A DNA stretch of 52,324 nucleotides from Macrostomum lignano (Eukaryota): positions 1 through 52,324 of the forward strand of contig NIVC01004268.1 of assembly GCA_002269645.1 (NCBI GenBank), read 5' to 3'. Shown here piece by piece: positions 625 through 39,659 of this stretch. A program made the position numbers and the translations under genes. How positions within the stretch are numbered: position 1 is the first letter of the stretch; every line of letters starts with the position of its first letter. The notes beneath the pieces were generated by a model. It was not told the DNA's origin, did not search any database, and saw only the letters and a list, made by a program, of their open reading frames with translations.

Positions 625-857
625 TAGAATGCATTGCTAATCTATCTGACAGGTGAGGGAGTAGAATGCATTGCTAATCTATCTGACAGGTGAGGGAGTA
701 GAATGCATTGCTAATCTATCTGACAGGTGAGGGAGTAGAATGCATTGCTAATCTATCTGACAGGTGAGGGAGTAGAATGCATTGCTAATCTATCTGACAG
801 GTGAGGAGTAGAATGCATTGCTAATCTATCTGACAGGTGAGGGAGTAGAATGCATTA
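625..857. repeat. 37-bp tandem repeat, ~6 copies
   Basis: Unit TAGAATGCATTGCTAATCTATCTGACAGGTGAGGGAG at 625, 662, 699 and onward. Confidence 0.95.
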
Positions 858-1119
858 GGGAGTCAGAAATGACAGAAATTTCTCTAACTTATTCCTCGTG
901 ATAATTAAAACGTAGCTAAGAACATGATAGAAAGAGGACGCCAATTGCAGCAGTAGTGATCGAAATTCGATCATGATCTAGTTAAAGCTACGGTGGTGCA
1001 ACTACAGATACATTTAATATATGTACGCTCATACATGAAGATCTAGCTAATATTCTCGCACGTTGCACAAGTATTAATGTAGTCCAGTCCTGCTGGTATA
1101 ATGTATCAACAAACACATC

Positions 1120-3330
1120 TGATGTAACCGCCCTTGTCGCCCGTCCGCTCCGTAGAGAGACGAACGCATGACTAGAGGGGGCAATGACCGTAGGCTGCCT
1201 ATGACCGGGCAATGACCTGACGGACCTCCAGCACCAGACTGTCCCGCCCACATGATTAGTAGCTTTGGTAGCGCTTCGTGACCAGAGGGCCAAGGACCCA
1301 CATGGACCCCACCTGTAGCCAAGGTGCAATAGTTGGTCACTCGGTCATAGTATGACCGAGTGGCTGCCACCACTCTATGTGACCTGGCGCACCTGGATCT
1401 TTCTACCAGACCTCTCGAGGCTAGAGCCCCGCCTGGATTGGTTACCAGGGGATTTAGGCTAACAGGGGAGACGCATGCAGCCGAGTACAGGGACTCTGCT
1501 TGGGGCATGATCGGGAACTCTGGGCTCAATCCTGGAGGATTTCTCAGCAGGGGATCCTTTGTGGCTGTGAGCGAGGCTGACTTGCGACTTTGATTACTAA
1601 GAGTAGTATGAGGCGAACATGTACTGTCTACAGTTTAGATTGCTCAGGGCGAAGGGACGCGTTAGCATGGGGTTGCAACCTTCCTACTGCCATTCTGTGC
1701 CAAGACTCGCTAATCCCTCTACTGCACGCACACGCGGCCCGCAGCACGCACTCACAGGCGGGCTTTGCACGGGGAGAGGCCATTAGCTTACCCAAACTTC
1801 CTTATGCTTTGCCACCCCGGGAGAAAGGCTTAGCAAGCCATGAGTGAAATGATGGTGAAAGATTGAATAATGATGAAGTTAGTTAATAGTTAATAATTAG
1901 GCCCTTAGGCAAATAAGCAGGCAATTAGGCGGCTTCACTATTGAGTAAAATACAGCAAAAGATACGGTATCACAATTGGCTCAGCTCTCTAATCAGACAA
2001 TGGAAAATAGGCAAACCCCGGATAAGCAAAGGCAATTAGAGCACAAATTAGTAGCAGGAACTTACCGGCAGCTGCACAGAGAGAGAGAGAGGCGGAGTGA
2101 CCGAGGGCGGCTGTAGGCTGCAGTCAGGCAGACGGTGAAGCGGCGATGCGCTGGAGCGACGAGGCGCTGATGTAGATCAGGCGATGCTGATGATGCGGGC
2201 GGTATCAGACCGCTGGCCGATAGGCGAGCTCACTTGGGGAGCTAAGGATAACTTGGCGGTAACAGACCGCGGCCGGCAGGGATTCGTCTTATAGACGAAT
2301 GGGTCAGAACTCAATCTGACAGCAAGTCCAAAGAAGGACGAGGAGAGGAACAGAGATAAACTCAGTTGAGTATTCTCATGCCGAAATCGCTTCCTTTTAT
2401 AGACCTCACAGCCGCCTCCTCAAGGTCGTTACCATGGCTCCCTCTCTCTGATTGGCTGCCGGCAGAATGACGTCAGAATGAGTCATGATGAGAAGCATGA
2501 GACCGGCATAGCAACATGAGAAATCGGGAAATTGCGCAATCCGGAGGTGGGGTGGGGGGATAATTGGCGCAGCGGGTGGTCGCGAAAGTGTTGCGCAAGC
2601 AAACATTGAGAACAATAGGGCTGGGGTCGAGAACAAAGGAATTGGAAATCGGGGATAATTGGGGAAAACTGAGAACAATGGAAAAGTAAACATTGGAGAA
2701 AAGGTGATAATTAGGTGCGAAAACGAGAACAAAAGAAAGAGAAAATCGGAGAAAATGTGATAATTGGTGGGGTCGAGAGAACAAAAGAAGCAAAAACGAG
2801 AACAATAGAAGCGGAGGTGGGGTGGGTGTCACATGAGAAATTTGGGAAGGAGAACAATAGCGTGAGAAAAGGTTGCGCAAGAGAGGGGGATGAGTCATCG
2901 ATGAGTCACCGAGGGGAGAAGGGGTCACACGACTTGCGTCACCGTTTGGGAGTTTGAGAGGGGATGGGGAGACGGTGAGCACACAAAGTACTGTAAGTAG
3001 ACACAGGGAAAGAGGGGACAGCGCAGGAAAAGAGTGCAGAGGGAGACAAAAAAAGGAGGAGGTAGAGAAAGTACAGGAAGAATAGGGCGGGAACAGAAGA
3101 GATAGGGTAGAGGGGGAGGTACAGAAAGGGGTAGGGGCTCCGGAAAGGCAGGTGTGGCGGCAGGAGAGACGGGACCAAGGCAGCAGGAGGGTGCAGCAGA
3201 GCGGGAGTCTCCAGGCCCGGTCGGAGACCTGGCCGAGTCTCGACAGCTCTGTGCAGAGGGTGCACGGGATAGGAGGCACTTTCGAAAAAGTTCCCATGCC
3301 CTATCCCGCGACCAGAGCGTGGTTACATCA
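1120..3330 (-). repeat. 3' LTR (2211 bp)
   Basis: Near-identical to 12033-14244; 10-bp terminal inverted repeats. Confidence 0.95.
2393..2908 (-). promoter_or_regulatory. LTR U3 promoter/enhancer (second copy in the 5' LTR, TATA at 13306-13314)
   Basis: TATAAAAGG 2401-2393; CCAAT 2455-2451; CRE TGACGTCA 2468-2475; AP-1 TGAGTCA at 2479, 2891, 2902; C/EBP ATTGCGCAAT 2531-2540 plus TTGCGCAA at 2591 and 2873; about 7 GAGAACAA(T/A) SOX-like motifs. Confidence 0.7.
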
Positions 3331-3340
3331 CACCCCCACT
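3331..3340 (-). other. Putative polypurine tract
   Basis: AGTGGGGGTG immediately before the 3' LTR; short and imperfect. Confidence 0.5.
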
Positions 3341-3934
3341 GCCTTTTGTGACGGAACTGGTTCCGTCATCATCACTGCCCAACATGGAACCACACAGACG
3401 GGAGCGGGATCTCAACCGAACGTGAAATCACAGAATTAACAAACCGCGAGCGGGAATGGAAAAAGGCGATAAAATAGAGGGGATAGCAATAAATTCACAA
3501 AACGAGATACATAGGTTGGAGTGCAATACAGAATTTCAAAAATTTCAACTGTTGCTGTGGCTAAAGTGGGAGGGGGGAAACACAGACAGCGCAATAGTAG
3601 GGAGAAAAATAGCGAATTGTCAACAATAAATTATCATAATTGGATAGAAGCGCAGCTGGGAAAGAGAGGAAACGGGGAAGGGTGAGGGAAGTGGGGAAAA
3701 AGAAGGGGGAAGGGTTGCTAGCACACAGCCAAGGGCAGAGCCTCGGGGAGAATGACGATTACACAGGGGAAAAATACTAATGCAGCGCAGTAAATTAATA
3801 AGCTAATTTCGCCGGGAGTTCAACCGCACGGAGGCCTAGCGTCCTTGAAGGCTCGGACCCCGCTTCAGCCAGTCAGAGGGCTTCGGGGCGATCGGTTGTA
3901 GGCTGGGAGGCGCCGCGCCGTGCGCTGGCCACTG

Positions 3935-4047
3935 TATAAAAGGCGCCACTGATAACGGGAGCCGGCTGCCTGCAACCTACACGGAGTCGCAGTTTCCAAC
4001 CAAGGCACTCAGCGCGATTTTCCAAACTATACAACTACTCGGTAAGT
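3935..4047 (+). promoter_or_regulatory. Internal antisense promoter and non-coding exon 1
   Basis: TATAAAAGG 3935-3943 after a GC-rich stretch; donor G|GTAAGT at 4041/4042; no ATG in the exon. Confidence 0.5.
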
Positions 4048-4389
4048 CCCATCACCAACCTGATTTCCTTTCGCCTATACGTTAAACGAAATCTACCCAC
4101 TCGCCATGCCTTTCGTTTTAAACTGAGCCAATTGCAGTAATAATATATGGCCTTTCTTACGGTAAAAGTAGTGAGCAGCCAACACAGAGCCATTTTTAGG
4201 AATTTTTAGAATAATGACACAACAATGACTCGTATATTGGTTATTAAAGTTTAAAAATGAATATTATGGAAGAACCGAATATTAATAGGATAATTTCACA
4301 CACACACACACGACAAACACACAACGCAAGGGGGCGGAAAGGCGGGTCGGACCGGCCGGCGGACGTCGCTCAGCAGGCAGTCAGCATCC

Positions 4390-5738
4390 TTACTCGAAAT
4401 GGGCCTCTTGATTTAGCTGGTACGGGCCATATGCCGCCACCTGAGCCATGGCACTTGCCCATGCTTCCACATAACGTTGGGCTGCCGCGGCCGTGAGCAC
4501 CACTCGGTGCCATCGGCTAGGCAAGATGTCGTTGCGCAGCACGCCCCTCAACTGCGGCAGAGTCGGGATGCCCAGGGCTTGGCATTGGACGACGAAGGCC
4601 GCATTCCGTACTTGTTGCAGCCGTGTCAGAGTTGGTGCAGACAGGGGCGGCTGCGCGATTGCAAAATGCTGCAAAGTGCCACGGGGCACCTCGGCCAGGC
4701 CCGCGTAGCCGGGCTCAACGTCGCCCAGGGCCGCCAACACCCACCCACAGCGGCGATTGAACCGTTGCGAGAGAGTGGCGGCCCAGGCCACTGTGGCAAA
4801 CGGCGCATAGAGGAGGGGCGCAGAGGCCGGCGCGGAGGCCGCAAGAATGCCGTCGTGGATGACGAGAGCCTCTTCCCATTCGGCGCCCTCGCTCAGGAAG
4901 CCCCAGAGCAGCCCTGGCAGGTCCGCAGGAAGCATGCCCCAGCGGCTGGCCAAGCTGGCCAGGCCAATCAATAGCCGGGCTCTCTGGGTTGGTGTCAGTT
5001 GTCTAGTCATCTGAGAGGAGGCTGCGCAGCTGATGATCACCTTCTTGTAGACCGGCCGATCGCAGGTGCTGAAGATTGCTGTGATGGGGGCACAGGACGG
5101 CGGCCGGGCTGTCAGGTGTGATGGTTCCTCATCCACAACCTTGCGGAGGAACTTGGCGGCCTGCCGGACTAGGTCGCCGAGGGCGTATTTGTAGGCGCTC
5201 TGGGCCGCTGCCTCGATGTACATTAACAGCGTATTGTCAACCAATCCCAGCAGGGCCGCTTTTGACAGGATGAGCAGACAGGGCCGGTCCAGGTTGTCGC
5301 GAAGTTGGCGCTCTAGAGTCGCATGCCTGTCCTCGGCCTGGAGTGGGCCATGATAGGACTCAGGCCCGACCCAGTGCACCAGATCCATAGCTGTCGCCGA
5401 AGGTTCGCCAGCCACCTGACCCCAATCGACTTCTTCTCTTTGCAGGGCGATGTCCACACTTCGGCGGCTGTTGGGCAGAACATCACGCAGGCGGCGGGCC
5501 GCCTCGCCGAATTCGGCCGCCAGTCCGAAATGTCCGCGGTGTCGCCCCCAGCATTGGCCGGGTCGATTGTCTCGTCACCTTCTTCGACCCTGGCGGAGGC
5601 CGCCGCTGGCGGCTCGGGGCCGTCCTCCGCCTCTTGGATGGCGTCACGGGGCCGCTTTCGGCTAACTGGGCTGGCAGGACGCTCAGACGGTAAGCTGGAG
5701 CATAGCTGAATTCGATTGATGGTAGGCTTCGTGTCCAT
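4390..5738 (-). CDS. Accessory ORF3 of the LTR element, unknown function (~449 aa if one base is restored at AAA 5528-5530)
   Basis: 355-aa open frame 4390-5457 joins the ATG at 5738 (GACATGG context) via +1 nt in a homopolymer, reading ...DTADIFGLAAEFGEAARRLRDVLP...; RKRPR motif; no domain recognised. Confidence 0.65.
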
Positions 5739-7147
5739 GTCAAGCTGGATAGTTCATAGAATGCTTCAGCGATTGAAGGACAGAATGATTTCTCTGATTG
5801 ATGATTTCCAGCTCTGGCAGGCGTGGGTCTTCTTATAGTGCCGGGGCTGGCTTCCCATTGGTTGAGCACATTGGGAGGCACACCTGCTGCGGCCGGGGTC
5901 GCCGTTGGCTTGGGACCGCTCGCTCTAGTCTCCGTGCGCTCTGATTGGCTGGTTCCGCCGCTTCCTGTTTCCTCACCTGTGAGAAGGGGCAGACCCGAGA
6001 CCACCTCCGGTCGCGCCCGCGGCAGATCCGTACTCCAGCCGACAGAGATCGCACTCCCACCTCACATGCACACATTCAGATCAGGCACACAAATTAATTT
6101 GGTTAATATGAATAGAAGAGGGATTTGGGAGATTAGACTCCGGAGGATAAATGATGATGCGGCCCAACTCCCTTCGATTTCTTCCTTCAACGCCACGCGC
6201 ACGCAGTTCTCATCCATGCCTCCGAGACCCTCATAAACTTAACAGCCGAAAGAATTCGAAAGAGGAATTAATCATTAATTTGACTGCCACCAGTTTGATG
6301 TACTATTATAAAAGAGAAAGGGGAACCTACCACCATCTTGGCGCATTACCAAAGAAAAGAAAAGGAGGATCAGCCACCATTTTGAGAGAGGTTGCTAGGG
6401 AAAACTGCCACCAATTGTACATTAACAGGGAAGAGAAAGAGGGAACCCGTCACCAATTAGAGTGGATTGCCCGGGGAAACTGCCACTATTTGCCCTTCTA
6501 CCAGAGGAGAGGAAGACGAAAAACTGCCATCCTTAGAGGTGTATCATTAAAAGAAGGCGGGGAAGAAGGCTACCACTACTTGATCACCTAGAGCTCAAGG
6601 GAAGGAGAGGGAATGAAGAAAGGAAGAAACCCCCAGGAAGGCCACTACCACACGCCATAAAGTTAAAATCCCCATCTATCTACATCCTAATACCCGGCTA
6701 GTTCCCTACTTCTATTTCATCCCTTAAATCTCATTTTCAGGATTCCGGCCGCTAGTAGCCGAGCCCATCCTTGAAGAGGAGTCCGACTACGAAGCGCCCG
6801 AAGACAGCCATTCAGAGCCGGACGCCCCCTCTGATTCTGGGCCGGCTGCGCCATCTGGTGACATAGGCGCCGCGGCTCCCGGGCCATGCGACCGCCGGGC
6901 CGCCAGCGAACCAGCGTCCGGGGCCGGTTGGCATCCGGTACCACCGCCGTTGTCAGCCCGAGCGCACGCTCCGCCGCCGGTCGCCGCGGTGACGCCCGTG
7001 GCTGCCGCTCCACAGCCCTTGCCAACCCCTGTGGTGGAGACCGACGGCTCCTGGCATTTGGTCGTGCTGTCGACGGCCCTAATAGCCGGTCTCACAATGC
7101 ACTGGCTACTGCTCTTGGAGCTATTTCTGCGGCTTCCCAACTGCTGA
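5450..7147 (+). CDS. Predicted spliced antisense gene (exons 5446-5689 and 6741-~7150), 188-215 aa, C-terminal hydrophobic anchor
   Basis: Acceptor TTCTTCTCTTTGCAG|5446; donor G|GTAAGC 5689/5690 (phase 1); acceptor TCATTTTCAG|6741 in matching phase; frame open to TGA 7145-7147; the unspliced frame is closed at 6725 with no ATG before the exon. Confidence 0.55.
6284..6655 (-). repeat. Array of ~9 degenerate PBS/LTR-junction mimics
   Basis: CT(G/A)CCAC(C/T)A motifs at 6284, 6327, 6371, 6405, 6447, 6480, 6524, 6570, 6645; 6284-6302 matches 12021-12039 at 18/19 nt. Confidence 0.75.
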
Positions 7148-7733
7148 TGCTGGTGGTTCTTAATGCTTACTTACTAATTCTGAACTATCTGTCCCCATAA
7201 CTTGACTTTAATTACTTACCTGACTTTACATTGACTAAACCACTGGCCTACTCTAAACTAATTGCTGCCCCATTTGCCTGATAAACTTAATTACATTGAA
7301 TGCCCCCCCTATTGCCTCATCGAAACCAATTAAAAGTTTCCCAAAATCGGACTTTCACAAAGTGTGAACAAACACACGAAATCAGACCTAAAGGTGCTAA
7401 TTTCCTACGGTCCCAGACTTCCATTGTTCCCAGAAAATCTTAAACAGCGGGGCAGGACCTCCTGTGGAGCAGACCCATAGAAATTTTACTAGTTTCCAAG
7501 TTAATATTTACTGATAGGGAATTAACGCATACTGTACGGGCCTAATTTTCGAGCTAAAATCTTAGATATTTAAACAACACCAACGAGCACGAGGTCACAA
7601 CATAAATTCGAGTAATAGAGGGCATACGTAAATACGCGAAAAGCGGTCTCCAACGGGGCAACACGAGCAAAATTTCGACACGCGAATCGGGGGGGGGAAT
7701 TAAGCAATCACTGGCTAGCTACCGATCTGTTAC

Positions 7734-8258
7734 TCAGCGGGGGTCGAATGGGAGACTCACACCTAGCAAGTAAACCTTTTCTGTTCGATAGTCTATGATA
7801 GCATGCGTACTGGCTAGAAAAGCACTACCCAGGAGGGAAACTGCTGCTGAATTGCCAACGACCAGAAAGAGGATTCTCACCTCTTCTAGCCCAATAACTG
7901 CTGTGAGGGTGGCCTGGCCTAGCATCTCTAATTCATTGCCCGTGTAGGACACGGCCTTCACACATGGGGGCTCCAGGGCCTCCACACTCTGTCCGGTAAT
8001 TTTAGTAAAGTCTTTGACTGTTAGCAAAGACAGCGCACTGCCCCCATCTACCAGGAGGCGGGTGGGAACATTCTCAATTGGCAACTCTACAACAATATCT
8101 CTCCCGCGTTGTCCTCTAGCTGGTCTTGGCTGATAGAAATCGGGTACCTTCTCAAATCTAAACTTCTTGCTGGGCGGACGTGGCAGGTTAAGCTGGGCCC
8201 TAGAGAGGGAACGGGGCTGAGTTCGGGCCGGGCCATTCAGCCCTCCCACGGGTTTCCC
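7734..8258 (-). CDS. pro: Retropepsin-like aspartic protease, -1 frame relative to gag, followed by a stop
   Basis: LLVDGGSALSLL active-site-like motif and C-terminal SLLGSAFL; overlaps the gag end. Confidence 0.85.
   Translation of the reverse strand, partial: GKPVGGLNGPARTQPRSLSRAQLNLPRPPSKKFRFEKVPDFYQPRPARGQRGRDIVVELPIENVPTRLLVDGGSALSLLTVKDFTKITGQSVEALEPPCVKAVSYTGNELEMLGQATLTAVIGLEEVRILFLVVGNSAAVSLLGSAFLASTHAIIDYRTEKVYLLGVSLPFDPR
8190..8258 (-). promoter_or_regulatory. -1 ribosomal frameshift signal
   Basis: G GGA AAC (8258-8252) in the gag frame; 8-nt spacer; stem GGGCTGA/TCAGCCC; loop GGCCC can pair with downstream GGGCC. Confidence 0.75.
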
Positions 8259-9680
8259 GAACCCGGGGGCTCTTCAGGCGTGGAAGGAGGAGGCATCAGA
8301 GCTTGCGCGCGCAGCTGGGCGAGCCTCTCCTGCCTCTCCCTGGTAGCCTCGTCTAACATATCTCTGCCCCACTCCTCTAAATCTTGCCTATGGCGATCAG
8401 GTGGCGCACGAAGCTGCAATTGCTGCTGCTGCACACCCGGCGCCGGCGGCGTGGGCGCCTCCTGAATTGCAAGCGGCGGGGGCTGGGGTTGGCGCCAGTT
8501 CCTACTGCTATTAGAGCCGCCCTGCCCCTGCCTCCAGTTCCTGTTGGGAGTGGCGGGGCGAGGGGGCCTCATCTGCTGGGGCAGCTGGGCAACAGACTCT
8601 GCTGTCGCCTTCATAGTTTCATTGAGCTGCACCAGCTGGTTGCGCAGATCCTTTTGCGTTTGCTCTAGCGCGCCCAACCTCTCTTGCATCTCTGATAGGC
8701 CGTCACCGTCCTCCTCCGTCTCGTCAGCTTCCTGGTTCACCATCCTGACCCACTTGCGAGGGGGCCTGGGTGGCTGCTGAGGTTGCAGACGGACTTCGGT
8801 GCGGGACTCAGACCTGGGCGGGCCACTACTGTCCCATTTCCCGGCTAAGTCTGCGGCTTCTAACAGGGCTTGCTGCTGTTCTAACACCTGCTCAATTGTC
8901 TGCCAGCGACGGCTCAACAGATCTTGTCTGACCTGGCGGGGGAGCTTAGCGTGTTCCAAGTAGGTGTACACGATTTCTTGTTCTCTCTGCTCACCCTGAA
9001 TCTGAGGAAACATGGCCGTTATCTGAGATCTTATCATAGCAGCAAAAGCACTATGTGATTGGCCGGGTTTCTGGCTCAGATTCTTCAGCTTATTTCTCTT
9101 AGCCAGATCAGTGTTGGCCTCGCCCAACTGCTCTCCTAATCTAGATACGAACTGCTCAAAGGGCAATTGCCCGTCCAATCCTAAGGCTAAGTTCTGAAAT
9201 TCACCTGGGAGGTGCGAGATGAGCACCTGCTTCCTAGCCTGATCTCCTACAGTTCTCTCCGCGTCCAGCTTGTAGATCATTCTCTCTACCCATTGCACAA
9301 AACAGTGTTCGCCGGGAGAGAACTTTCTACGTAGATTTTCGGCCTCTGGGCGTCTTGGCCCATGTTTAGCTGGTTAAACGCATTGGCTATAGCGGCAACT
9401 AAGTCTCCTAGCTGCGGGACTGCCTGAGGAGGATTCTGGGCTGCGTCCGGGGGAGCAGCGGCGGCTGCTGCGCACCCTGATTGGGAGCGGGAGCTGCTAC
9501 TCCTTCATCTGGTTCCTCAACTACTACTGCTTCTGGAGGCTGAGGGACCTGGTTACCAGCGGCTGCGGCCATTGCGGCTGCGGGGGCGGCAACTGCTGGG
9601 GTGTCAGCGGCCGAGGGTGGTTGACCAGGGGCGTCTGCGCACACAGCTTCTACGACCCTATCTCCACGCGCCCGTGACAT
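8237..9680 (-). CDS. gag: Gag (Ty3/Gypsy capsid-like, no zinc knuckle), with two single-base frameshifts
   Basis: ATG 9680 after a pyrimidine tract/AG acceptor (9696); capsid-like segment KFSPGEHCFVQWVERM...LKNLSQKPGQSHSAFAAMIR; shifts between 9408-9505 and at TTTT 9336-9339. Confidence 0.8.
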
Positions 9681-12011
9681 GTGAATGCCGGATAGCTGGG
9701 GAGTACCCACCACCGGGAAGGAAAAGAAAAGAAAACCGGGGCAACTACAGGTAAAGACCGAAAAGTTGATCCGAAACACACAAACACAGACAAAACTCAC
9801 ACACTTGCGGCGTCGAAGAAAACAAATTGAAAAACGGGTGGCTCCACATAATTCCATTTAGGCAGTCCTAACGGCTTCACTCGGCAAAGCACACTGACTC
9901 AAACTGCGGCTACCACTACCAGTTGTCTATGGCACATCCTGACAGGGAAAAATTGGCTATTCAGAGAGACTTGACCTTCATTTTGCGGCCATGCTAGGGA
10001 ACCCAAATGCCGACCGTAAACGGACTTACGGCACCTGTACAAATTCTCCCCTAGGGTTGCGCGCCGGACCCCATTTCCTTAAGAAAGCTACTACGAAGAA
10101 GCGTTGGCGCCTGGACCCAAAAACCCAAGTGGCGGGAGCAATCCCCATGGAGGTCCTCCCACTTTACTGCCCTTGCACAGCCGGAAAACCGTCGGAGTCC
10201 AGTGGGGCTTCCACCTCAGGACTACCAATCTTGTACACGCAGCTTCACAAAAGGCGGGAATCCAGCTCCCCTACGTCTAGCAGAATCCACAAAAACCAAG
10301 ACCTCCCCCTTCTGTTCAGAGCGAAGGCGCGCAGCGGGAGTCCAGACTAAACTGTCCCCGAAGTTTTCAGGTTAGGCGGATTACAAGCCTGAAACTCTCG
10401 CCCGCTTTCCTAGGATAAACAGACCTAAGTGAGTATCTTCCTGAAATGCTTGCCCCTCCGATACTCCACCTTTGCTGCAGCTCGAAATAGCATACTTGGG
10501 ACCTTTATCTGATGGCGGAGAAAGTCCTACAGTTGTCAGCCTCTCCACTTTACTGTACTTGAACGCCCGGTTCTACCAGGAGACAGCGGTACCTCCATCT
10601 AGGTTATTCCAAGTTGCCAGAGACGTCAACCCGTCTTATTGACCTTGCGGGGCACTGGGGTGGCACTCTATGTACCGGGGCTTTACATTAGGGGACTGCA
10701 TGCAACCCTGCGTCTAAGCGCTTAGTGGGCTGCAGTGGCCAGAGGGGAAAAGAGTTGCGCAATAGCGCCTTCCTGGGCCAGGCTGACAAGTCGGGCAGGA
10801 GCGCCGTTCTACCGGGTCGGGCTGATTGGCACACCCACCTCCCCTATCAGACTGACAGCAGGGGGGAGGAATTACTAAAGGAGGAGAATGCAGCAGGAAA
10901 CATTACGAGATCACTGGGGGCCACCAGACTTCCAGTACACCATTCCAATACTCACTGAACTCCACTATCAATAGGATACTATGGGATCTACTATTTCCAG
11001 CCACTGCACCAGCCCAAATGCAACCAAAGCAGTTACTACCGGGTCTGCAATACAGTGGGGAGAGTCAGCAGACACGTTGGGATCGAATCCCAGCCATGAA
11101 GGCACCAGGGGTTACCGCAGAATTCAGGTCCGGGCTGATCGCAGGTATTCCATAGGAGGTGACACTTTTTTTAGCCCGAGATTTTTGAGTCACACTGATA
11201 CCCTACAGAGATACAATCACACCGCTATTCCCATTCCTGCGAGACTTTGGTATCCCCCAATGTTTCCAAGGCCATGACTACTGCTTCCCTTACTATGCAT
11301 ATATAGCGAGTTCCCCATAGCCCTTGATAGCTGTTCATTCTAATGGACAAACAAAACACGCTCCGGTCTCTACGCATTTCTAGGATTAACTGAGCGATCA
11401 GGGAGAGCGACTGTTACACTCCCCCGAGTAAAAGAAAGAGGTAGGACAAAGGAAAGAAATGCTTCGCTTCCAGCTTCCCTGTGCTTGCGTGATGAGGCTT
11501 CCGTACCTGGCTGGCTGTCCACCTCAACACTCACACAGTTCTGCTGTAGGCTAGGCGAGAGAAAGAAAGGGAGGGGAAATAAAGCATATTACCATGAAAT
11601 AGAAAGTGAGTCCGGAAAATTCACTTTCGCAGTTCTTCACACACTCCGTTACCAGGTAGCTATTCTGATTGTAATCAAATCCGCTCGTCTACCACTTCAC
11701 ACTTTCTAGCGCTGAAACTGATCGGCTAAATTAATTTTAAATTGAATCAGGGGCTTTTGGCGAATGAATGAATTTGGAAATTTCGAATGAATTGAACGAA
11801 TTCGCAGCCCGAAAAATTTGAAAAGTTACATTAATATTTTTGGATTTTGTTGCCTCACGCCATGGGAGAAGAGAATGACGATTGGCGATTTTTACGATTG
11901 GTAGATTTAGACATGGCACTCTTTGCGCTTCGGCCACCATTCTGAGGGATGCCACAGGTGCGCTTGTCACATCTAAACCACCAGTCCGAAACTCAGCGCT
12001 GTTTGCACCAG

Positions 12012-12029
12012 ATCCCACCGCTGCCACCA
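12012..12029 (-). other. Primer-binding site, tRNA-Leu
   Basis: TGGTGGCAGCGGTGGGAT is complementary to the 3' 18 nt (ATCCCACCGCTGCCACCA) of metazoan tRNA-Leu; 3 nt from the LTR end. Confidence 0.9.
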
Positions 12030-12032
12030 TTT

Positions 12033-14244
12033 TGATGTAACCGCCCTTGTCGCCTGTCCGCTCCGTAGAGAGACGAACGCATGACTAGAGGGGGCAATGA
12101 CCGTAGGCTGCCTATGACCGGGCAATGACCTGACGGACCTCCAGCACCAGACTGTCCCGCCCACATGATTAGTAGCTTTGGTAGCGCTTCGTGACCAGAG
12201 GGCCAAGGACCCACATGGACCCCACCTGTAGCCAAGGTGCAATAGTTGGTCACTCGGTCATAGTATGACCGAGTGGCTGCCACCACTCTATGTGACCTGG
12301 CGCACCTGGATCTTTCTACCAGACCTCTCGAGGCTAGAGCCCCGCCTGGATTGGTTACCAGGGGATTTAGGCTAACAGGGGAGACGCATGCAGCCGAGTA
12401 CAGGGACTCTGCTTGGGGCATGATCGGGAACTCTGGGCTCAATCCTGGAGGATTTCTCAGCAGGGGATCCTTTGTGGCTGTGAGCGAGGCTGACTTGCGA
12501 CTTTGATTACTAAGAGTAGTATGAGGCGAACATGTACTGTCTACAGTTTAGATTGCTCAGGGCGAAGGGACGCGTTAGCATGGGGTTGCAACCTTCCTAC
12601 TGCCATTCTGTGCCAAGACTCGCTAATCCCTCTACTGCACGCACACGCGGCCCCGCAGCACGCACTCACAGGCGGGCTTTGCACGGGGAGAGGCCATTAG
12701 CTTACCCAAACTTCCTTATGCTTTGCCACCCGGGAGAAAGGCTTAGCAAGCCATGAGTGAAATGATGGTGAAAGATTGAATAATGATGAAGTTAGTTAAT
12801 AGTTAATAATTAGGCCCTTAGGCAAATAAGCAGGCAATTAGGCGGCTTCACTATTGAGTAAAATACAGCAAAAGATACGGTATCACAATTGGCTCAGCTC
12901 TCTAATCAGACAATGGAAAATAGGCAAACCCCGGATAAGCAAAGGCAATTAGAGCACAAATTAGTAGTAGGAACTTACCGGCAGCTGCACAGAGAGAGAG
13001 AGAGGCGGAGTGACCGAGGGCGGCTGTAGGCTGCAGTCAGGCAGACGGTGAAGCGGCGATGCGCTGGAGCGACGAGGCGCTGATGTAGATCAGGCGATGC
13101 TGATGATGCGGGCGGTATCAGACCGCTGGCCGATAGGCGAGCTCACTTGGGGAGCTAAGGATAACTTGGCGGTAACAGACCGCGGCCGGCAGGGATTCGT
13201 CTTATAGACGAATGGGTCAGAACTCAATCTGACAGCAAGTCCAAAGAAGGACGAGGAGAGGAACAGAGATAAACTCAGTTGAGTATTCTCATGCCGAAAT
13301 CGCTTCCTTTTATAGACCTCACAGCCGCCTCCTCAAGGTCGTTACCATGGCTCCCTCTCTCTGATTGGCTGCCGGCAGAATGACGTCAGAATGAGTCATG
13401 ATGAGAAGCATGAGACCGGCATAGCAACATGAGAAATCGGGAAATTGCGCAATCCGGAGGTGGGGTGGGGGATAATTGGCGCAGCGGGTGGTCGCGAAAG
13501 TGTTGCGCAAGCAAACATTGAGAACAATAGGGCTGGGGTCGAGAACAAAGGAATTGGAAATCGGGGATAATTGGGGAAAACTGAGAACAATGGAAAAGTA
13601 AACATTGGAGAAAAGGTGATAATTAGGTGCGAAAACGAGAACAAAAGAAAGAGAAAATCGGAGAAAATGTGATAATTGGTGGGGGTCGAGAGAACAAAAG
13701 AAGCAAAAACGAGAACAATAGAAGCGGAGGTGGGGTGGGTGTCACATGAGAAATTTGGGAAGGAGAACAATAGCGTGAGAAAAGGTTGCGCAAGAGAGGG
13801 GGATGAGTCATCGATGAGTCACCGAGGGGGAGAAGGGGTCACACGACTTGCGTCACCGTTTGGGAGTTTGAGAGGGGATGGGGAGACGGTGAGCACACAA
13901 AGTACTGTAAGTAGACACAGGGAAAGAGGGGACAGCGCAGGAAAAGAGTGCAGAGGGAGACAAAAAAGGAGGAGGTAGAGAAAGTACAGGAAGAATAGGG
14001 CGGGAACAGAAGAGATAGGGTAGAGGGGGAGGTACAGAAAGGGGTAGGGGCTCCGGAAAGGCAGGTGTGGCGGCAGGAGAGACGGGACCAAGGCAGCAAG
14101 AGAGGTGCAGCAGAGCGGGAGTCTCCAGGCCCGGTCGGAGACCTGGCCGAGTCTCGACAGCTCTGTGCAGAGGGTGCACGGGATAGGAGGCACTTTCGAA
14201 AAAGTTCCCATGCCCTATCCCGCGACCAGAGCGTGGTTACATCA
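12033..14244 (-). repeat. 5' LTR (2212 bp)
   Basis: Matches 1120-3330 with about ten differences seen by eye, mostly homopolymer indels. Confidence 0.95.
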
Positions 14245-14758
14245 CATCAACGAGTTATTACATGTATACGTATACATTAGTTCAATATACGAGCATTTAT
14301 ATATTCTAAAAATCAGAATGGCACCCAGTTTGAATGACAGATTTCGGCCATTTTTTACAAGCTCTTTATTTATCTGCATGTACGTTTACCTGCAGCCTGC
14401 AGGCAGATAAACACAGTTCTGCTCAAGCCCGACTGCACTCCCACATGTAAGCAGGCTACTAGAGTGCAATACACACAACAGTTACGCGTAAAAACAGAGC
14501 CAAGTATTGAGTTCCTCACCGCCTTGCGTACAGTGTACTCGTAGATACATGCAATTAAGCCACGCCAACAAAATGATAATGAATGCAGTCAAAAAATGTC
14601 TGACACTCAAACAGTACAACTCTGATAAGAGATTTCCTTAAAAAATGCATGGATCGAGCCCTTGCATTTGTAAAAGCATGATTCAAAGACAGTCAAAAAA
14701 AACAGAACTACATGTAAGTCCAAAGCCGAAAACAACTTACTAGCAAAAAGTAACTGCA

Positions 14759-16531
14759 ATGGCATTTGCATGCAGAAAACTGCCTGAGCCGATCAAACGA
14801 CACTGGCGAGTCCTGCCGCTGCTGCTGGCGCCGGTGCTGCTGTCGCCACTGCTGACGATGGGCTCCGAGAAGGCCCGCTGCGCCTACCTGCTGCTGCTGA
14901 TGGCCACCTACTGGGTGCTGGAGCTGCTGCCGCTGAGCCTCACCGCCGTGCTGCCCTTCTTCCTCGGTCCGCTGCTGCGCATCGGCACCTGTCATGAGCT
15001 CGCCAAGTCCTACTTCACCGACATCCACTTCCTCATGATTGGCGGCGTCATGCTGTCCGTGGCCATGGAGGACACAGGACTCAGCCGTCGGTTCGCCCTT
15101 CGAACTGTGGCGCTGCTGGGAACGCGGCCGCGCTGGCTGCTGCTCGGCTTCATGCTGCCCTCCTGGCTCATGTCCATGTGGATGAGCAACACCGGCACCA
15201 CCATCCTCATGTTCCCCTTCGTGATGGCGGCAATCGCCGAAACAGAGAAGGCTACCGAGCAGCTGCAGGACGCCCCTGATCGAGAGTCGCTCGCGCTCGA
15301 CCAGCGAGAAAAGCACCCTACAGCGACTGACTGCGAAGGCGCCGCTGCAGAGCCTCCGCCGCCGTGCGAGGACGGCCTGGACTCCAACACTGTCGGCAAG
15401 ACGCGTCACAAAACACACACTCGAAGCCACGCAGTCTGCTACTGTCTCTCCGTGGCCTACGCCTGCAACGTAGGCGGAGTGGCCACTCTGATCGGCACCG
15501 GAACCAACCTCGTGCTCGTCGGACAACTCCAGCAGATCTACCGCGTCTCCAATGTGGTCACCTTCTCCAACTGGATGGCCTTTAGCTTGCCGTTGTCGCT
15601 GTTCAGCCTGTTGCTCATCTGGTTGCTGCTCCAGCTTGTTTTTGTTGGTCCGCGCGACACCTTTAACTGGCGCTCGCAGTCGGCCGAACAGAAGCGACAG
15701 GAGGCTCGGGTGAAGCTCTACTTCCACCAGCAGCTGGAGGCTCTCGGGTCAGTTTCGTTCGCCGAGTGGGCCACCATGGCCGCTTTTCCGTGCGTACTGC
15801 TGCTCCTGCTGACAGGCAAGCTGACCTCCAGCTTCGGCTGGCACTACCTGTTCGGCTCCGTCAACGACAAGCCGGTCGTGTCCGACGCCACCGGAATGCT
15901 GCTGGTCGCTCTGCTGCTCACTCTGATCCCCAACCCCGACCTGACCGAGGAGCACGGACCGACCAACAGTCTGGGATATCGAGCCGTCGCTCGGTGGGAT
16001 CGAGTCCTGCTCAAGATCCCGCTCGACATCATGCTGCTCATCGGAGGAGGCCTCGCTCTAGCCAAGCTCACTAAGGACACCAAGCTGTCAGAGACCATCG
16101 GGTCCGCGCTGACTCCCACACTGCAGGCGCTGCCCACCGAGCTGACGCTGCTGCTGCTCAGCTTCTGCGTCATCTGGCTCACGGAAGTCACCTCCAACAT
16201 GGCCACCGCCTCCGTCCTGCTGCCCATAGTAGCCCAGATCGCCGCCTGTCTCGGACACAATCCGCTGCTGTTCATGGTCTCGCTCACCGTCACCTGCTCG
16301 TTCGCGTTCTGCCTACCGACCGCCACACCGCCAAATGCCATCGTGTTCGGCAGCGGCCGGGTCAGCATTCCCAGCATGGCCAAGGCCGGTCTCGTGCTCA
16401 ATCTGGTTTTCTCGACTATTGTGCCGTTCTACACGATGCTAGTGGGTCGTTGGGTGTACAGCGTACACGAACTCCCTGAGTGGGCTGAGACCTCGTCGAG
16501 CTTGTGTGCCAACGAGACGTTTTCGGGATAA
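14759..16531 (+). CDS. SLC13: SLC13/INDY-family Na+-coupled di/tricarboxylate or sulfate transporter, copy A, intronless
   Basis: 590 aa, multi-TM; motifs SMWMSNTGT, TEVTSNMAT, FCLPTATPPNAIVF. Confidence 0.92.
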   Translation: MAFACRKLPEPIKRHWRVLPLLLAPVLLSPLLTMGSEKARCAYLLLLMATYWVLELLPLSLTAVLPFFLGPLLRIGTCHELAKSYFTDIHFLMIGGVMLSVAMEDTGLSRRFALRTVALLGTRPRWLLLGFMLPSWLMSMWMSNTGTTILMFPFVMAAIAETEKATEQLQDAPDRESLALDQREKHPTATDCEGAAAEPPPPCEDGLDSNTVGKTRHKTHTRSHAVCYCLSVAYACNVGGVATLIGTGTNLVLVGQLQQIYRVSNVVTFSNWMAFSLPLSLFSLLLIWLLLQLVFVGPRDTFNWRSQSAEQKRQEARVKLYFHQQLEALGSVSFAEWATMAAFPCVLLLLLTGKLTSSFGWHYLFGSVNDKPVVSDATGMLLVALLLTLIPNPDLTEEHGPTNSLGYRAVARWDRVLLKIPLDIMLLIGGGLALAKLTKDTKLSETIGSALTPTLQALPTELTLLLLSFCVIWLTEVTSNMATASVLLPIVAQIAACLGHNPLLFMVSLTVTCSFAFCLPTATPPNAIVFGSGRVSIPSMAKAGLVLNLVFSTIVPFYTMLVGRWVYSVHELPEWAETSSSLCANETFSG

Positions 16532-19361: not shown

Positions 19362-21140
19362 CTAACCACCCAGCTTTGTAGAGTTTATGTAGTTACTCGA
19401 CGTTTGATTGCTGCCGGAGCAGGAAGTCGACGAAGACTCCGCCCACTTGGGCAATTCGTGCACGCTGTATACCCAACTACCGACTAACAAAGCGTACAGA
19501 GGAATAAAAACCGAGAAAACCAGATTGAGCACGAGACCGGCCTTGGCCATGCTGGGAATGCTGACCCGGCCGCTGCCGAACACGATGGCATTTGGCGGTG
19601 TGGCGGTCGGTAGGCAGAACGCGAACGAGCAGGTGACGGTGAGCGAGACCATGAACAGCAGCGGGTTGTGTCCGAGACACGCGGCGATCTGGGATACTAT
19701 GGGCAGCAGGACGGAGGCGGTGGCCATGTTGGAGGTGACTTCCGTGAGCCAGATGACGCAGAAGCTGAGCAGCAGCAGCGTCAGCTCGGTGGGCAGCGCC
19801 TGCAGTGTGGGAGTCAGCGCGGACCCGATGGTCTCTGACAGCTTGGTGTCCTTAGTGAGCTTGGCTAGAGCGAGGCCTCCTCCGATGAGCAGCATGATGT
19901 CGAGCGGGATTTTGAGCAGGACTCGATCCCACCGAGCGACGGCTCGATATCCCAGACTGTTGGTCGGTCCGTGCTCCTCGGTCAGGTCGGGGTTGGGGAT
20001 CAGAGTGAGCAGCAGAGCGACCAGCAGCATTCCGGTGGCGTCGGACACGACCGGCTTGTCGTTGACGGAGCCGAACAGGTAGTGCCAGCCGAAGCTGGAG
20101 GTCAGCTTGCCCGTCAGCAGGAGCAGCAGCACGCACGGAAAAGCGGCCATGGTGGCCCACTCGGCGAACGAAACTGACCCGAGAGCCTCCAGCTGCTGGT
20201 GGAAGTAGAGCTTCACCCGAGCTTCCTGTCGCTTCTGCTCGGCCGACTGTGAGCGCCAGTTGAAGGTGTCGCGCGGACCAACAAAGACAAGCTGGAGCAG
20301 CAACCAGATGAGCAACAGGCTGAACAGCGACAACGGCAAGCTGAAGGCCATCCAGTTGGAGAAGGTGACCACATTGGAGACGCGGTAGATCTGCTGGAGT
20401 TGTCCGACGAGCACGAGGTTGGTTCCGGTGCCGATCAGAGTGGCCACTCCGCCTACGTTGCAGGCGTATGCCACGGAGAGACAGTAGCAGACAGCGTGGC
20501 TTCGAGTGTGTGTTTTGTGTCGCGTCTTGCCGACAGTGTTGGAGTCCAGACTGTCCTCGCACGGCGGTGCAGGCTCTGCAGCGGCGCCTTCGCAGTCGGT
20601 CGCTGCAGGGTGCTTTTCTCGCTGGTCGAGCGCGAGCGACTCTCGATCAGGGGCGTCCTGCAGCTGCTCGGTAGCCTTCTCCGTCTCGGCGATTGCCGCC
20701 ATCACGAAGGGTAACATGAGGATGGTGGTGCCGGTGTTGCTCATCCACATGGACATGAGCCAGGAGGGCAGCATGAAGCCGAGCAGCAGCCAGCGCGGCC
20801 GCGTTCCCAGCAGCGCCACAGTTCGAAGGGCGAACCGACGGCTGAGTCCTGTGTCCTCCATGGCCACGGACAGCATTACGCCGCCAATCATGAGGAAGTG
20901 GATGTCGGTGAAGTAGGACTTGGCGAGCTCATGACAGGTGCCGATGCGCAGCAGCGGACCGAGGAAGAAGGGTAGCACGGCGGTGAGGCTCAACGGCAGC
21001 AGCTCCAGCACCCAGTAGGTGGCCATCAGCAGCAGCAGGTAGGCGCAGCGGGCCTTCTCGGAGCCCATCGTCAGCAGTGGCGACAGCAGCACCGGCGCCA
21101 GCAGCAGCGGCAGGACTCGCCAGTGCCGTTTCAGCTGCAT
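19362..21140 (-). CDS. SLC13: SLC13 transporter copy B, intronless, inverted relative to copy A
   Basis: Core differs from copy A at 5 aa; first ATG 21140 (MQLKRHW); frame open from 21224. Confidence 0.92.
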   Translation of the reverse strand: MQLKRHWRVLPLLLAPVLLSPLLTMGSEKARCAYLLLLMATYWVLELLPLSLTAVLPFFLGPLLRIGTCHELAKSYFTDIHFLMIGGVMLSVAMEDTGLSRRFALRTVALLGTRPRWLLLGFMLPSWLMSMWMSNTGTTILMLPFVMAAIAETEKATEQLQDAPDRESLALDQREKHPAATDCEGAAAEPAPPCEDSLDSNTVGKTRHKTHTRSHAVCYCLSVAYACNVGGVATLIGTGTNLVLVGQLQQIYRVSNVVTFSNWMAFSLPLSLFSLLLIWLLLQLVFVGPRDTFNWRSQSAEQKRQEARVKLYFHQQLEALGSVSFAEWATMAAFPCVLLLLLTGKLTSSFGWHYLFGSVNDKPVVSDATGMLLVALLLTLIPNPDLTEEHGPTNSLGYRAVARWDRVLLKIPLDIMLLIGGGLALAKLTKDTKLSETIGSALTPTLQALPTELTLLLLSFCVIWLTEVTSNMATASVLLPIVSQIAACLGHNPLLFMVSLTVTCSFAFCLPTATPPNAIVFGSGRVSIPSMAKAGLVLNLVFSVFIPLYALLVGSWVYSVHELPKWAESSSTSCSGSNQTSSNYINSTKLGG

Positions 21141-27876: not shown

Positions 27877-28190
27877 ACCGTTGCTGATGCAAGCTTTAGT
27901 TGCTAATGTAGACAACCGTTGCTCATGCAAGCTTTAGTTGCTAATGTAGACAACCGTTGCTCATGCAAGCTTTAGTTGCTAATGTAGACAACCGTTGTTC
28001 ATGCAAGCTTTAGTTGCTAATGTAAACAACCGTTGCTCATGCAAGCTTTAGTTGCTAATGTAGACAACCGTTGCTCATGCAAGCTTTAGTTGCTAATGTA
28101 GACAACCGTTGCTCATGCAAGCTTTAGTTGCTAATGTAAACAACCGTTGCTCATGCAAGCTTTAGTTGCTAATGTAAACACCCGTTGCTT
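27877..28190. repeat. 38-bp tandem repeat, ~8 copies
   Basis: Unit ACCGTTGCTCATGCAAGCTTTAGTTGCTAATGTAGACA. Confidence 0.95.
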
Positions 28191-39459: not shown

Positions 39460-39659
39460 ACTATACTTTTACTTTTCAATATAAAAAGTGTTTTTGAGGA
39501 TGGTTTTAAACAAGCTTTGTTATTTTGCTTTTTTGTCTTAATTCACAAAGAACTAAACATGTATTTTTTTCGTTTTTAGAAGTACCGACTGATTATTCCT
39601 GAATCATTAAAAAATTATTATTTTTTAATTTATACAATTTCGAAGCACTAATTATCAAT

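What the first reader, a model, noticed from the sequence alone, without database searches (positions are those of the whole stretch)
1120..14244. Young LTR element with Gag-protease, no pol, and virus-like accessory genes
Seen: intact TSD, near-identical LTRs, perfect 18-nt PBS, gag, a protease ending in a stop, and no RT/RNase H/IN motif in 8.7 kb of internal sequence. Established: reverse transcription and integration need RT and IN, and gag-only non-autonomous LTR elements are known from plants. Inference: this element builds and matures its own particles but borrows Pol in trans. It also carries sense and antisense accessory genes, splice sites (donors at 10029, 7219 and in the LTR) and a 2.3-kb leader, like a complex retrovirus or satellite. 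I do not recognise this architecture in an animal.
Basis: partly seen in the sequence, partly recalled or inferred. Interest (0 to 1): 0.88.

Follow-up and report, generated by a model that had tools for sequence, protein, structure and literature searches.

The report
Pol-less flatworm LTR retrotransposon copy
This is a recently inserted 13-kb LTR retrotransposon in the flatworm Macrostomum lignano that keeps a capsid gene, a protease gene and one unknown gene but has no reverse transcriptase or integrase; it must have been copied by another element's enzymes, which is a known lifestyle but in an uncommon form for an animal.

Summary
Window 1120-14244 is a complete LTR element on the minus strand of a Macrostomum lignano contig. 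It has two 2.2-kb LTRs differing by 3 substitutions, TG..CA inverted ends, a 4-bp CATC target duplication, an 18/18 tRNA-Leu(AAG) primer site and a polypurine tract. The interior encodes a capsid-fold Gag and, in the -1 frame behind a G GGA AAC slippery heptamer, a retropepsin-fold protease. No RT, RNase H or integrase is detectable in any of six frames. It is best read as a non-autonomous Ty3/Mdg4-derived element mobilised in trans. Nothing shows that it builds and matures its own particles. The Gag frame has no start codon ahead of its conserved region and no zinc knuckle, and the protease active-site triad is non-canonical. Only one 'accessory gene', sense ORF3, looks coding, and it has no relatives and is not env-like. 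The antisense and leader ORFs are indistinguishable from chance, and splicing is untested. Pol-less LTR elements are already known in animals, flatworms included. Copy number and the helper could not be examined, because the tools do not reach the rest of the genome. This is a new variant of a known kind, of modest interest.

The parts
1116..1119 (.). Target-site duplication, left copy (CATC)
   Evidence: Identical 4 nt flank both LTR outer ends.
1120..3330 (-). 3' LTR in the element's orientation, 2211 nt, TG..CA ends
   Evidence: Direct repeat of 12033-14244 with 3 mismatches and 7 one-base indels. The terminal 10-mer occurs only at the LTR ends.
3333..3347 (-). Polypurine-tract-like run, 2 nt upstream of the 3' LTR
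   Evidence: Read directly from the sense strand.
3348..4389 (-). Region between the ORF3 stop and the PPT, with no supported coding
   Evidence: No ORF of 100 aa or more on the sense strand. No Pfam hit.
4390..5574 (-). ORF3: 394-codon open frame plus stop, first in-frame ATG at codon 63. It looks coding but has no known relatives.
   Evidence: Longer than every one of 300 dinucleotide shuffles, whose maximum was 344. GC1/2/3 is 0.70/0.51/0.70. Frame contrast under a host codon model is 0.314, above all 55 null ORFs. No Pfam, PDB-sequence or protein-database hit. The AF2 single-sequence model has pLDDT 36. No sequons and no clear signal peptide or TM segment.
5575..7733 (-). Spacer between the protease stop and ORF3, where RT would lie in an autonomous element. 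There is no pol remnant.
   Evidence: Pfam six-frame scans and tblastn were negative. The short ORFs here are at or near null level.
7734..8273 (-). Protease open frame (179 codons plus stop), -1 relative to gag. It has the retropepsin fold with a non-canonical active-site triad.
   Evidence: PDB phmmer gives E=2.2e-7 to retroviral-like aspartic protease 1 over the whole domain. BLASTP gives E=5e-8 to the protease of the Ty3/Mdg4 element on L002. PF13975 matches end to end at E=0.021. There are 0 internal stops.
8252..8258 (-). G GGA AAC slippery heptamer in the gag frame, 13 nt before the gag stop
   Evidence: Read from the sequence. It is the same heptamer as in PEG10 (PMC2800197). Both Gag relatives carry A AAA AAC at the equivalent place, with the protease in the -1 frame. 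The downstream fold is no better than shuffles (z=-0.87).
8237..9373 (-). Gag open frame (378 codons plus stop). It has a two-lobe capsid region followed by a coiled-coil, Q/P/R-rich tail. It has no zinc knuckle and no ATG ahead of the conserved region.
   Evidence: Exhaustive HMMER gave one hit, P0001, at E=3.4e-4. Pairwise BLASTP gives E=8e-11 over residues 17-188. P0001 is a Gag (PF03732 plus zf-CCHC) encoded upstream of an RT-RH-IN ORF. The AF2 model has pLDDT 70-92 over residues 30-178. The top Foldseek hits are all retroelement capsids. The first in-frame Met is codon 32. No CCHC motif.
9374..12011 (-). Long 5' untranslated leader
   Evidence: The longest open frame, 149 codons, is matched by 86 of 300 shuffles. 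Frame contrast is inside the null. No Pfam hit.
12012..12029 (-). Primer-binding site, 18 nt, complementary to the tRNA-Leu(AAG) 3' end, 3 nt from the LTR
   Evidence: It is identical to the first 18 nt of a published Leu(AAG) 3'-end probe and is the reverse complement of the published 3'-tRF-Leu(AAG/TAG).
12033..14244 (-). 5' LTR in the element's orientation, 2212 nt
   Evidence: On the sense strand it has one TATAAA, no AATAAA, no heat-shock element and a pyrimidine-rich tract of about 600 nt.
14245..14248 (.). Target-site duplication, right copy (CATC)

Best explanation
This is one recently integrated copy of a non-autonomous LTR retrotransposon descended from a Ty3/Mdg4 (gypsy-type) lineage, in the flatworm Macrostomum lignano. 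Shown: it carries every cis signal needed for reverse transcription and integration, namely two near-identical LTRs with TG..CA inverted ends, a tRNA-Leu(AAG) primer site, a polypurine tract and a 4-bp target duplication. Shown: its coding layout is the front end of a Ty3/Mdg4 element, a capsid-fold Gag followed in the -1 frame by a retropepsin behind a slippery heptamer. Shown: RT, RNase H and integrase are absent, and unrelated sequence that includes one coding-looking orphan gene (ORF3) sits in their place. Inferred: its RNA, transcribed from the 5' LTR, was packaged, primed by tRNA-Leu, reverse-transcribed and integrated by the enzymes of an autonomous helper. By analogy with other such pairs, the helper should share the LTR termini, the PBS and the 4-bp duplication length. 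Inferred: the element's own Gag and protease are probably not required, and may not work in this copy. The reasons are the missing start codon before the conserved capsid region, the missing zinc knuckle and the atypical catalytic triad. ORF3 is most likely either a captured sequence or a lineage-specific gene. Its codon usage is closer to host genes than that of gag or the protease. Its function is unknown.
For: Structure. PBS identity. Gag. Protease. Frameshift design shared with two relatives. Absence of pol, with a positive control in the same window. ORF3 coding signal. Host and assembly. Animal precedents for trans-mobilised pol-less LTR elements, and the criteria for matching a helper: PMC4558846 and PMC3286476. 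Published M. lignano LTR surveys seed on RT or discard unclassified elements, so such a family would not have been catalogued: PMC12801592 and PMC5730564.
Against: Only one copy could be examined, so 'family' and 'helper' are inferences. No helper with matching termini or PBS is present in the window. The decayed pol at 30-32 kb belongs to a different, older element. Gag and the protease remain fully open, with a preserved slippery heptamer. That is more than a purely passive RNA parasite needs, and it could mean they are used. The assembly is PacBio-based, and 6 of 7 LTR indels lie in homopolymers. The missing Gag start could therefore be an assembly error rather than biology.
Confidence: 0.68

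Rival explanations
1. It is a one-off chimeric copy. During reverse transcription of an autonomous parent, template switching to another co-packaged RNA replaced pol with foreign sequence, including ORF3. The product integrated once and has never moved again, so there is no family.
For: Pol is replaced rather than deleted. ORF3 codon usage differs from gag and the protease and is closer to host genes (GC3 0.70 against 0.63 and 0.53, host 0.80). Only one copy was seen, and no relative of gag or ORF3 from this species exists in the protein collections.
Against: TE ORFs of this assembly appear not to have been called in those collections. Only 1 gene is on record across 21.7 kb, so their silence says little about copy number. 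No host homologue of ORF3 was found either. The gag is extremely diverged from any known autonomous element, with a best match of 22% identity. That fits a long independent history better than a recent accident.
Confidence: 0.2
2. This is a satellite-like element that makes and matures its own particles with functional Gag and protease, expresses accessory proteins from spliced mRNAs, and borrows only RT and integrase.
For: The gag and protease frames are open, with 0 internal stops. The slippery heptamer is preserved. The capsid and retropepsin folds are supported. ORF3 looks coding. A consensus-quality donor hexamer lies downstream of the protease.
Against: No start codon precedes the conserved capsid region, and there is no zinc knuckle. 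The catalytic triad is non-canonical. The antisense and leader ORFs are at chance level. Donor hexamers are not enriched. There are no expression data.
Confidence: 0.1
3. It is an assembly artefact: a mis-join of repeats in a PacBio/Canu contig created an apparent element.
For: The genome is repeat-rich and redundant, and the assembly was difficult (PMC5730564). Homopolymer indels are visible.
Against: Matching 4-bp duplications sit exactly at both outer LTR ends. The PBS and PPT lie in the correct places and orientation, and gag then protease follow in the correct order. A mis-join would not produce this arrangement.
Confidence: 0.02

Closest known systems
LARDs and other coding-poor non-autonomous LTR retrotransposons (plants; Culex cqUNK families; mammalian MaLR)
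   Same: It has intact LTRs, PBS, PPT and TSD with a long interior lacking RT and IN, and it is presumably mobilised in trans. Culex examples reach 14.6 kb with LTRs more than 98% identical, and one has a Leu PBS (PMC3286476).
   Different: Those elements lack coding sequence. This one keeps open gag and protease frames and a coding-looking ORF3, and its LTRs are unusually long at 2.2 kb.
TR-GAG elements of plants (terminal-repeat retrotransposons with a GAG domain)
   Same: It is a non-autonomous LTR element that retains gag but not pol.
   Different: TR-GAGs are described from plants and are gag-only. Here a protease in the -1 frame and a third ORF are also present, the host is an animal, and there is no sequence relationship.
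ta-TRIM and its candidate helper 'lennie' in taeniid flatworms (PMC4558846)
   Same: It is a flatworm non-autonomous LTR element with a tRNA-Leu PBS and a 4-5 bp TSD. That paper supplies the logic for finding a helper: shared LTR termini, PBS and TSD length.
   Different: ta-TRIMs are under 1 kb and non-coding.
PEG10 (domesticated Ty3/Mdg4 gag-protease gene of mammals)
   Same: It has a capsid-fold Gag followed by a retropepsin in the -1 frame behind the identical GGGAAAC heptamer, and no RT or IN (PMC2800197). The gag relative P0001 hits the Pfam family named PEG10_N-capsid.
   Different: PEG10 is a single-copy host gene without LTRs, PBS or TSD. This locus has all of them and near-identical LTRs, so it is a recent insertion rather than a domesticated gene. 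PEG10 Gag also keeps a zinc knuckle.
The Ty3/Mdg4 element on metagenome contig L002 (P0001 gag plus RT-RH-IN), with its relative P0002
   Same: They are the only detectable relatives of this gag among 1.84 billion representative proteins. They share the gag / -1 / protease layout and a slippery heptamer.
   Different: Identity is 22% for gag and 27% for the protease. They have a CCHC knuckle, a canonical protease triad and a full pol. They are far too distant to be the helper.

Membership tests
LTR retrotransposon (structural definition) | Two long direct terminal repeats with TG..CA inverted ends | tested here: met
   The LTRs are 2211 and 2212 nt with 3 substitutions between them. The ends are TGATGTAACC..GGTTACATCA.
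LTR retrotransposon (structural definition) | Target-site duplication flanking the element | tested here: met
   CATC lies on both sides. The chance of a 4-nt match is about 1 in 256.
LTR retrotransposon (structural definition) | tRNA primer-binding site next to the 5' LTR and a polypurine tract next to the 3' LTR | tested here: met
   The PBS matches the tRNA-Leu(AAG) 3' end 18/18 and lies 3 nt from the LTR. The PPT is at 3333-3347.
Autonomous LTR retrotransposon or retrovirus | Encodes RT, RNase H and integrase | tested here: not met
   There is no Pfam hit in six whole frames. There is no tblastn hit with a full pol, which did find the control element.
Ty3/Mdg4 (Metaviridae) superfamily | RT phylogeny and the pol order PR-RT-RH-IN | not testable with these tools
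   No RT is present. Assignment rests only on gag and protease similarity to one Ty3/Mdg4 element, so descent is inferred and membership is not shown.
Ty3/Mdg4 (Metaviridae) superfamily | Gag with a capsid domain and a CCHC nucleocapsid knuckle | tested here: inconclusive
   The capsid fold is met. The CCHC knuckle is absent from all sense frames.
Retropepsin (family A2-like aspartic protease) | Retropepsin fold with a catalytic Asp-Thr/Ser-Gly triad | tested here: inconclusive
   Whole-domain matches are at E=2e-7 and 5e-8. The Asp is present, but the next residue is not the Thr/Ser of all comparators.
Non-autonomous LTR retrotransposon family (LARD / TR-GAG type) | Multiple dispersed copies sharing the pol-less interior, each with its own TSD | not testable with these tools
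The exact-protein look-ups and the metagenome and viral scans were empty.
Non-autonomous LTR retrotransposon family (LARD / TR-GAG type) | An autonomous helper sharing LTR termini, PBS and TSD length | not testable with these tools
   None is present in the window. The literature supplements were not held as text.
Complex retrovirus or env-bearing endogenous retrovirus | An env gene (signal peptide, glycosylation sites, TM anchor) and spliced subgenomic mRNAs | tested here: not met
   ORF3 has no sequons and no clear signal peptide or TM segment. There is no env Pfam hit. Splicing was not testable, and donor hexamers are not enriched.
Domesticated gag-protease gene (PEG10-like) | A host gene without LTRs, PBS or TSD, conserved at an orthologous locus | tested here: not met
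   Near-identical LTRs, a PBS, a PPT and a TSD are all present.

The most novel reading that the evidence does not exclude
M. lignano hosts a multi-copy family of LTR elements that have given up RT and integrase but keep, under selection, their own capsid, their own protease and a new protein (ORF3). These would be capsid-encoding parasites of an autonomous retrotransposon, an animal counterpart of plant TR-GAG elements and loosely of satellite viruses. ORF3 would act in competition with the helper or against host silencing.
Probability: 0.12. Interest if true: 0.6.

Novelty: new variant of a known kind. Interest (0 to 1): 0.33.

Why it matters
If this copy represents a family, it shows that animal LTR-element parasites can retain structural genes while losing the enzymes. 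It would also offer a tractable pair, parasite and helper, in a flatworm model where LTR elements make up about a fifth of the genome. There is a practical point as well. RT-seeded mining (PMC12801592) cannot see such elements. The genome paper's LTRharvest run required a 5-bp minimum duplication and then discarded unclassified elements (PMC5730564). A slice of this genome's LTR content may therefore be uncatalogued. If it is a single rearranged copy, it is an ordinary defective insertion.

Tried and rejected
2. The exhaustive search with gag gave a single marginal hit. Searching with that hit added one more protein, so the alignment is only 3 deep.
3. The AF2 model of ORF3 without an alignment had pLDDT 36, so no fold search was run on it.
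4. I tested whether the upstream frame (9289-9504) holds the missing Gag N-terminus. BLASTP gave no support (E=0.28 and 27), so no frameshift in gag is claimed.
5. The RNA fold downstream of the slippery heptamer is no more stable than shuffles. Pseudoknots cannot be assessed with the tool.
6. The LTR has no heat-shock elements of the kind reported for other M. lignano LTR families.
7. The window has no tRNA genes and no Rfam matches.
8. The interior shows no meaningful internal repeats or signs of a nested element.
9. Searches for other copies or a helper all came back empty: exact-protein look-ups, metagenome scans by gag profile and by LTR-end-plus-PBS pattern, a viral-contig scan and the paper's supplements.
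10. The decayed pol at 30-32 kb was rejected as helper or parent. It has different terminal repeats and none of this element's termini or PBS.


Full report
**Where the window comes from.** The transporter ORF at 14759-16531 is recorded, with exactly this product, on contig NIVC01004268.1 of assembly GCA_002269645.1. That contig is 52,324 bp, so the window is the whole contig. [quoted passage not shown] The assembly was built from PacBio reads with Canu and polished with Pilon. LTR retrotransposons make up about 21% of the genome.

- **LTRs.** A direct repeat of about 2.2 kb occupies 1120-3330 and 12033-14244. A global alignment shows 3 mismatches, all transitions, and 7 single-base indels in 2215 columns. 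Six of the 7 indels sit in homopolymer runs, which is the usual signature of residual long-read consensus error. The true LTR divergence is therefore probably about 0.14%.
- **Ends and target duplication.** The LTRs begin TGATGTAACC and end GGTTACATCA. That 10-mer occurs exactly four times in the window, all at LTR ends. CATC flanks the element on both sides.
- **Orientation, PBS and PPT.** The element lies on the minus strand. Three nucleotides inside the LTR at 12033, the sense strand reads TGGTGGCAGCGGTGGGAT (12012-12029). This is unique in the window even with three mismatches allowed. Searching the literature with the window's own sequence shows that it is the exact reverse complement of the published 3'-tRF of tRNA-Leu(AAG/TAG). 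It is also identical to the first 18 nt of a published Leu(AAG) 3'-end probe. The comparators are human, and no flatworm tRNA was available. A purine run (3333-3347) ends 2 nt before the other LTR.

**Gag.**
- **Homology.** The 378-codon open frame 8240-9373 (-) has no Pfam hit and no hit in the word-indexed collection. An exhaustive HMMER pass over 1.84 billion representative proteins found one match, P0001, at E=3.4e-4. The pairwise BLASTP E-value is 8e-11, with 22% identity over residues 17-188.
- **What P0001 is.** P0001 is a 304-aa Gag with weak PF03732 (PEG10_N-capsid) and zf-CCHC matches. On a metagenome contig it lies just upstream of a 1,299-aa ORF carrying RVT_1, RNase H, an integrase zinc domain and the rve core. 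It therefore belongs to a Ty3/Mdg4-type element. Its only relative is P0002, at 43% identity.
- **Fold.** An AlphaFold model from the three-sequence alignment is confident (pLDDT 70-92) over residues 30-178 and all-helical. Its best PDB matches are all retroelement capsids: Arc (probability 1.00), Copia, PNMA2, MOAP1, Ty3 and lentiviral CA. The E-values are modest, with the best at 8e-3.
- **Departures from the relatives.** Both relatives carry a CCHC knuckle, but no CX2CX4HX4C motif exists in any sense frame of the interior. The open frame starts right after a stop codon, and its first in-frame ATG is codon 32. That is inside the region that aligns with the relatives. I tested whether the missing N-terminus lies in the neighbouring frame and found no support.
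- **Tally.** Gag has 0 internal stops and 0 demonstrable frameshifts. It has one missing or unidentified start and one missing domain. Given the homopolymer errors, an assembly artefact at the 5' end cannot be excluded.

**Protease and the gag-protease junction.**
- **Homology.** The 179-codon frame 7737-8273 (-) overlaps the end of gag in the -1 frame. It matches solved structures of retroviral-like aspartic protease 1 across the whole domain (E=2.2e-7). It also matches the protease region of the L002 element (E=5e-8, 27% identity). PF13975 aligns end to end at E=0.021.
- **Active site.** The catalytic Asp is present. The next residue is Gly where every comparator has Thr or Ser. From established knowledge of retropepsins, that residue takes part in the hydrogen-bond network at the dimer interface. 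Activity is therefore doubtful, though it was not tested.
- **Frameshift site.** In the gag frame, 13 nt before the gag stop, lies G GGA AAC (8252-8258). This is an X XXY YYZ slippery heptamer identical to the one used by PEG10 (PMC2800197). Both relatives have A AAA AAC in the gag frame shortly before their gag stop, a -1 protease frame and a canonical triad. Programmed -1 frameshifting is thus the ancestral design, and it is preserved here. The downstream RNA folds no better than shuffles (z=-0.87).

**Is pol really absent?** Yes, within the reach of these methods. Pfam scans of all three sense and all three antisense whole-frame translations of the 8,702-nt interior, with stops masked as X, found no RT, RNase H or integrase family at E<=1. 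tblastn with the complete L002 pol hit RNase H and integrase remnants of a different, decayed element at 30.7-32.2 kb (E=2e-28 and 1e-16). It found nothing inside this element. The protease frame ends three residues after its alignment with the relative's protease. The following 4.4 kb has no similarity to pol, so pol has been replaced rather than partly deleted.

**The 'accessory genes'.**
- **ORF3.** ORF3 (4393-5574, sense) is open for 394 codons, longer than in any of 300 dinucleotide-preserving shuffles of its surroundings (maximum 344). Its codon-position GC is 0.70/0.51/0.70, compared with 0.60/0.45/0.81 for the host transporter ORF used to train the model. Its frame contrast under a codon model trained on the window's host genes is 0.314, above all 55 other ORFs of 100 aa or more in the window. 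It therefore looks like real coding sequence, and more host-like than gag (GC3 0.63) or the protease (GC3 0.53).
- **What ORF3 is not.** It has no Pfam, PDB-sequence or protein-database relative. The single-sequence model is unusable. It has no N-glycosylation sequons, and no clear signal peptide or membrane anchor. It is not env-like.
- **Other ORFs.** The antisense ORFs (4417-4971 and 9943-10347) and the leader ORF (9411-9857) fall inside the null distribution. The leader's longest ORF is matched by 86 of 300 shuffles. Two short sense ORFs (6790-7170 and 5316-5753) are borderline.
- **Splice sites.** The donor-like GTAAGT hexamers at 10029 and 7219 are real and on the sense strand. Such hexamers are not enriched, with 11 on the sense strand and 5 on the antisense strand against about 6 expected. 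Nothing here can show that they are used.

**How it most likely works.** The cis apparatus is complete and the insertion is recent, yet the element encodes no polymerase or integrase. Its RNA must therefore have been reverse-transcribed and integrated by proteins of another element. This is the established behaviour of non-autonomous LTR elements. Following the logic used for the taeniid ta-TRIMs (PMC4558846), the helper should share the LTR termini, the tRNA-Leu PBS and the 4-bp duplication length. None is present in the window. Whether the element's own Gag and protease contribute is open. Their frames are intact and the frameshift site is preserved. However, the missing start, the missing knuckle and the atypical triad argue against full function in this copy.

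**Comparison with what is known.** Pol-less LTR elements are well known in plants (LARD, TRIM, TR-GAG) and have been reported in animals. Examples are TRIMs in ants and taeniid flatworms, 38 non-coding families of up to 14.6 kb in Culex and MaLRs in mammals. This locus differs in three ways: it retains gag plus protease plus one coding-looking orphan ORF, it has 2.2-kb LTRs, and its gag is almost without relatives. Its gag / -1 / protease layout and heptamer resemble PEG10. The LTRs, PBS and duplication show that it is an insertion, not a domesticated gene.

**Why it would have been missed.** Published M. lignano LTR surveys would not have catalogued it. The 2025 survey starts from RT. The genome paper's LTRharvest run required a duplication of at least 5 bp and discarded unclassified elements.

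**Limits.** I could not reach the rest of the M. lignano genome. The protein collections hold no called gene for this element; only one gene is on record across 21.7 kb of this contig. Exact-protein look-ups, two metagenome scans and a viral scan were empty. Copy number, conservation of the ORFs among copies, the helper's identity and expression all remain open. The rival reading, a single chimeric copy made by template switching, stays alive at about 0.2.

**Verdict.** This is a new variant of a known kind, a non-autonomous LTR retrotransposon, and interest is modest until a genome-wide census is done.

Noticed in passing
window 29865-33238: This is a second, old LTR-type remnant on the minus strand. 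Direct repeats of about 200 bp (29865-30057 and 33030-33238) are 87.6% identical. RNase H and integrase remnants are spread over at least three overlapping reading frames. No RT hit was found. It shares neither termini nor PBS with the element studied.
   Followed up: partly
window 14759-16531 (+) and 19362-21140 (-): Two intronless Na+/sulfate-symporter-family ORFs (PF00939) lie in inverted orientation and are 97% identical over 1.7 kb, with different first codons. Only the first is on record as a called gene. The element's 5' LTR ends about 510 bp upstream of that gene's ATG and points away from it.
   Followed up: partly
window 625-856: A 37-bp tandem repeat of 6.3 copies at 98% identity lies about 260 bp outside the element's 3' LTR.
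   Followed up: no
window 27877-28217, 38757-39146, 39655-40284, 41847-42860, 43251-43495: There are several short-period satellite arrays, with periods of roughly 21-38 bp. Some create long repetitive open frames on both strands. This fits the reported 15% simple and tandem repeat content of the genome.
   Followed up: no
window 12033-14244 (and its copy 1120-3330): The LTR is unusually long. On the sense strand it has a tract of about 600 nt that is roughly 75% pyrimidine, and an internal 53-bp repeat of 2.2 copies. It lacks AATAAA and heat-shock elements. A 275-codon S/P/L-rich open frame inside it shows no coding signal.
   Followed up: partly
LTR pair, window 1120-3330 vs 12033-14244: Six of the seven indels between the LTRs are one-base length differences in homopolymer runs. 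This suggests residual long-read consensus errors in the assembly, so apparent single-base frame problems in repeats of this assembly should be treated with caution.
   Followed up: yes
L002 (JGI metagenome 3300040801) and L003 (Logan SRR21285602): The only detectable relatives of this gag form a tiny, otherwise orphan Ty3/Mdg4 lineage. Both have an A AAA AAC heptamer before the gag stop and the protease in the -1 frame. Their source organisms are unknown.
   Followed up: partly
window 22500-23417 (+): This is a 306-codon open frame with multiple hydrophobic segments, and it looks like an intronless GPCR-type membrane protein. Its codon usage matches the transporter genes. It was not searched against any family library.
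   Followed up: no
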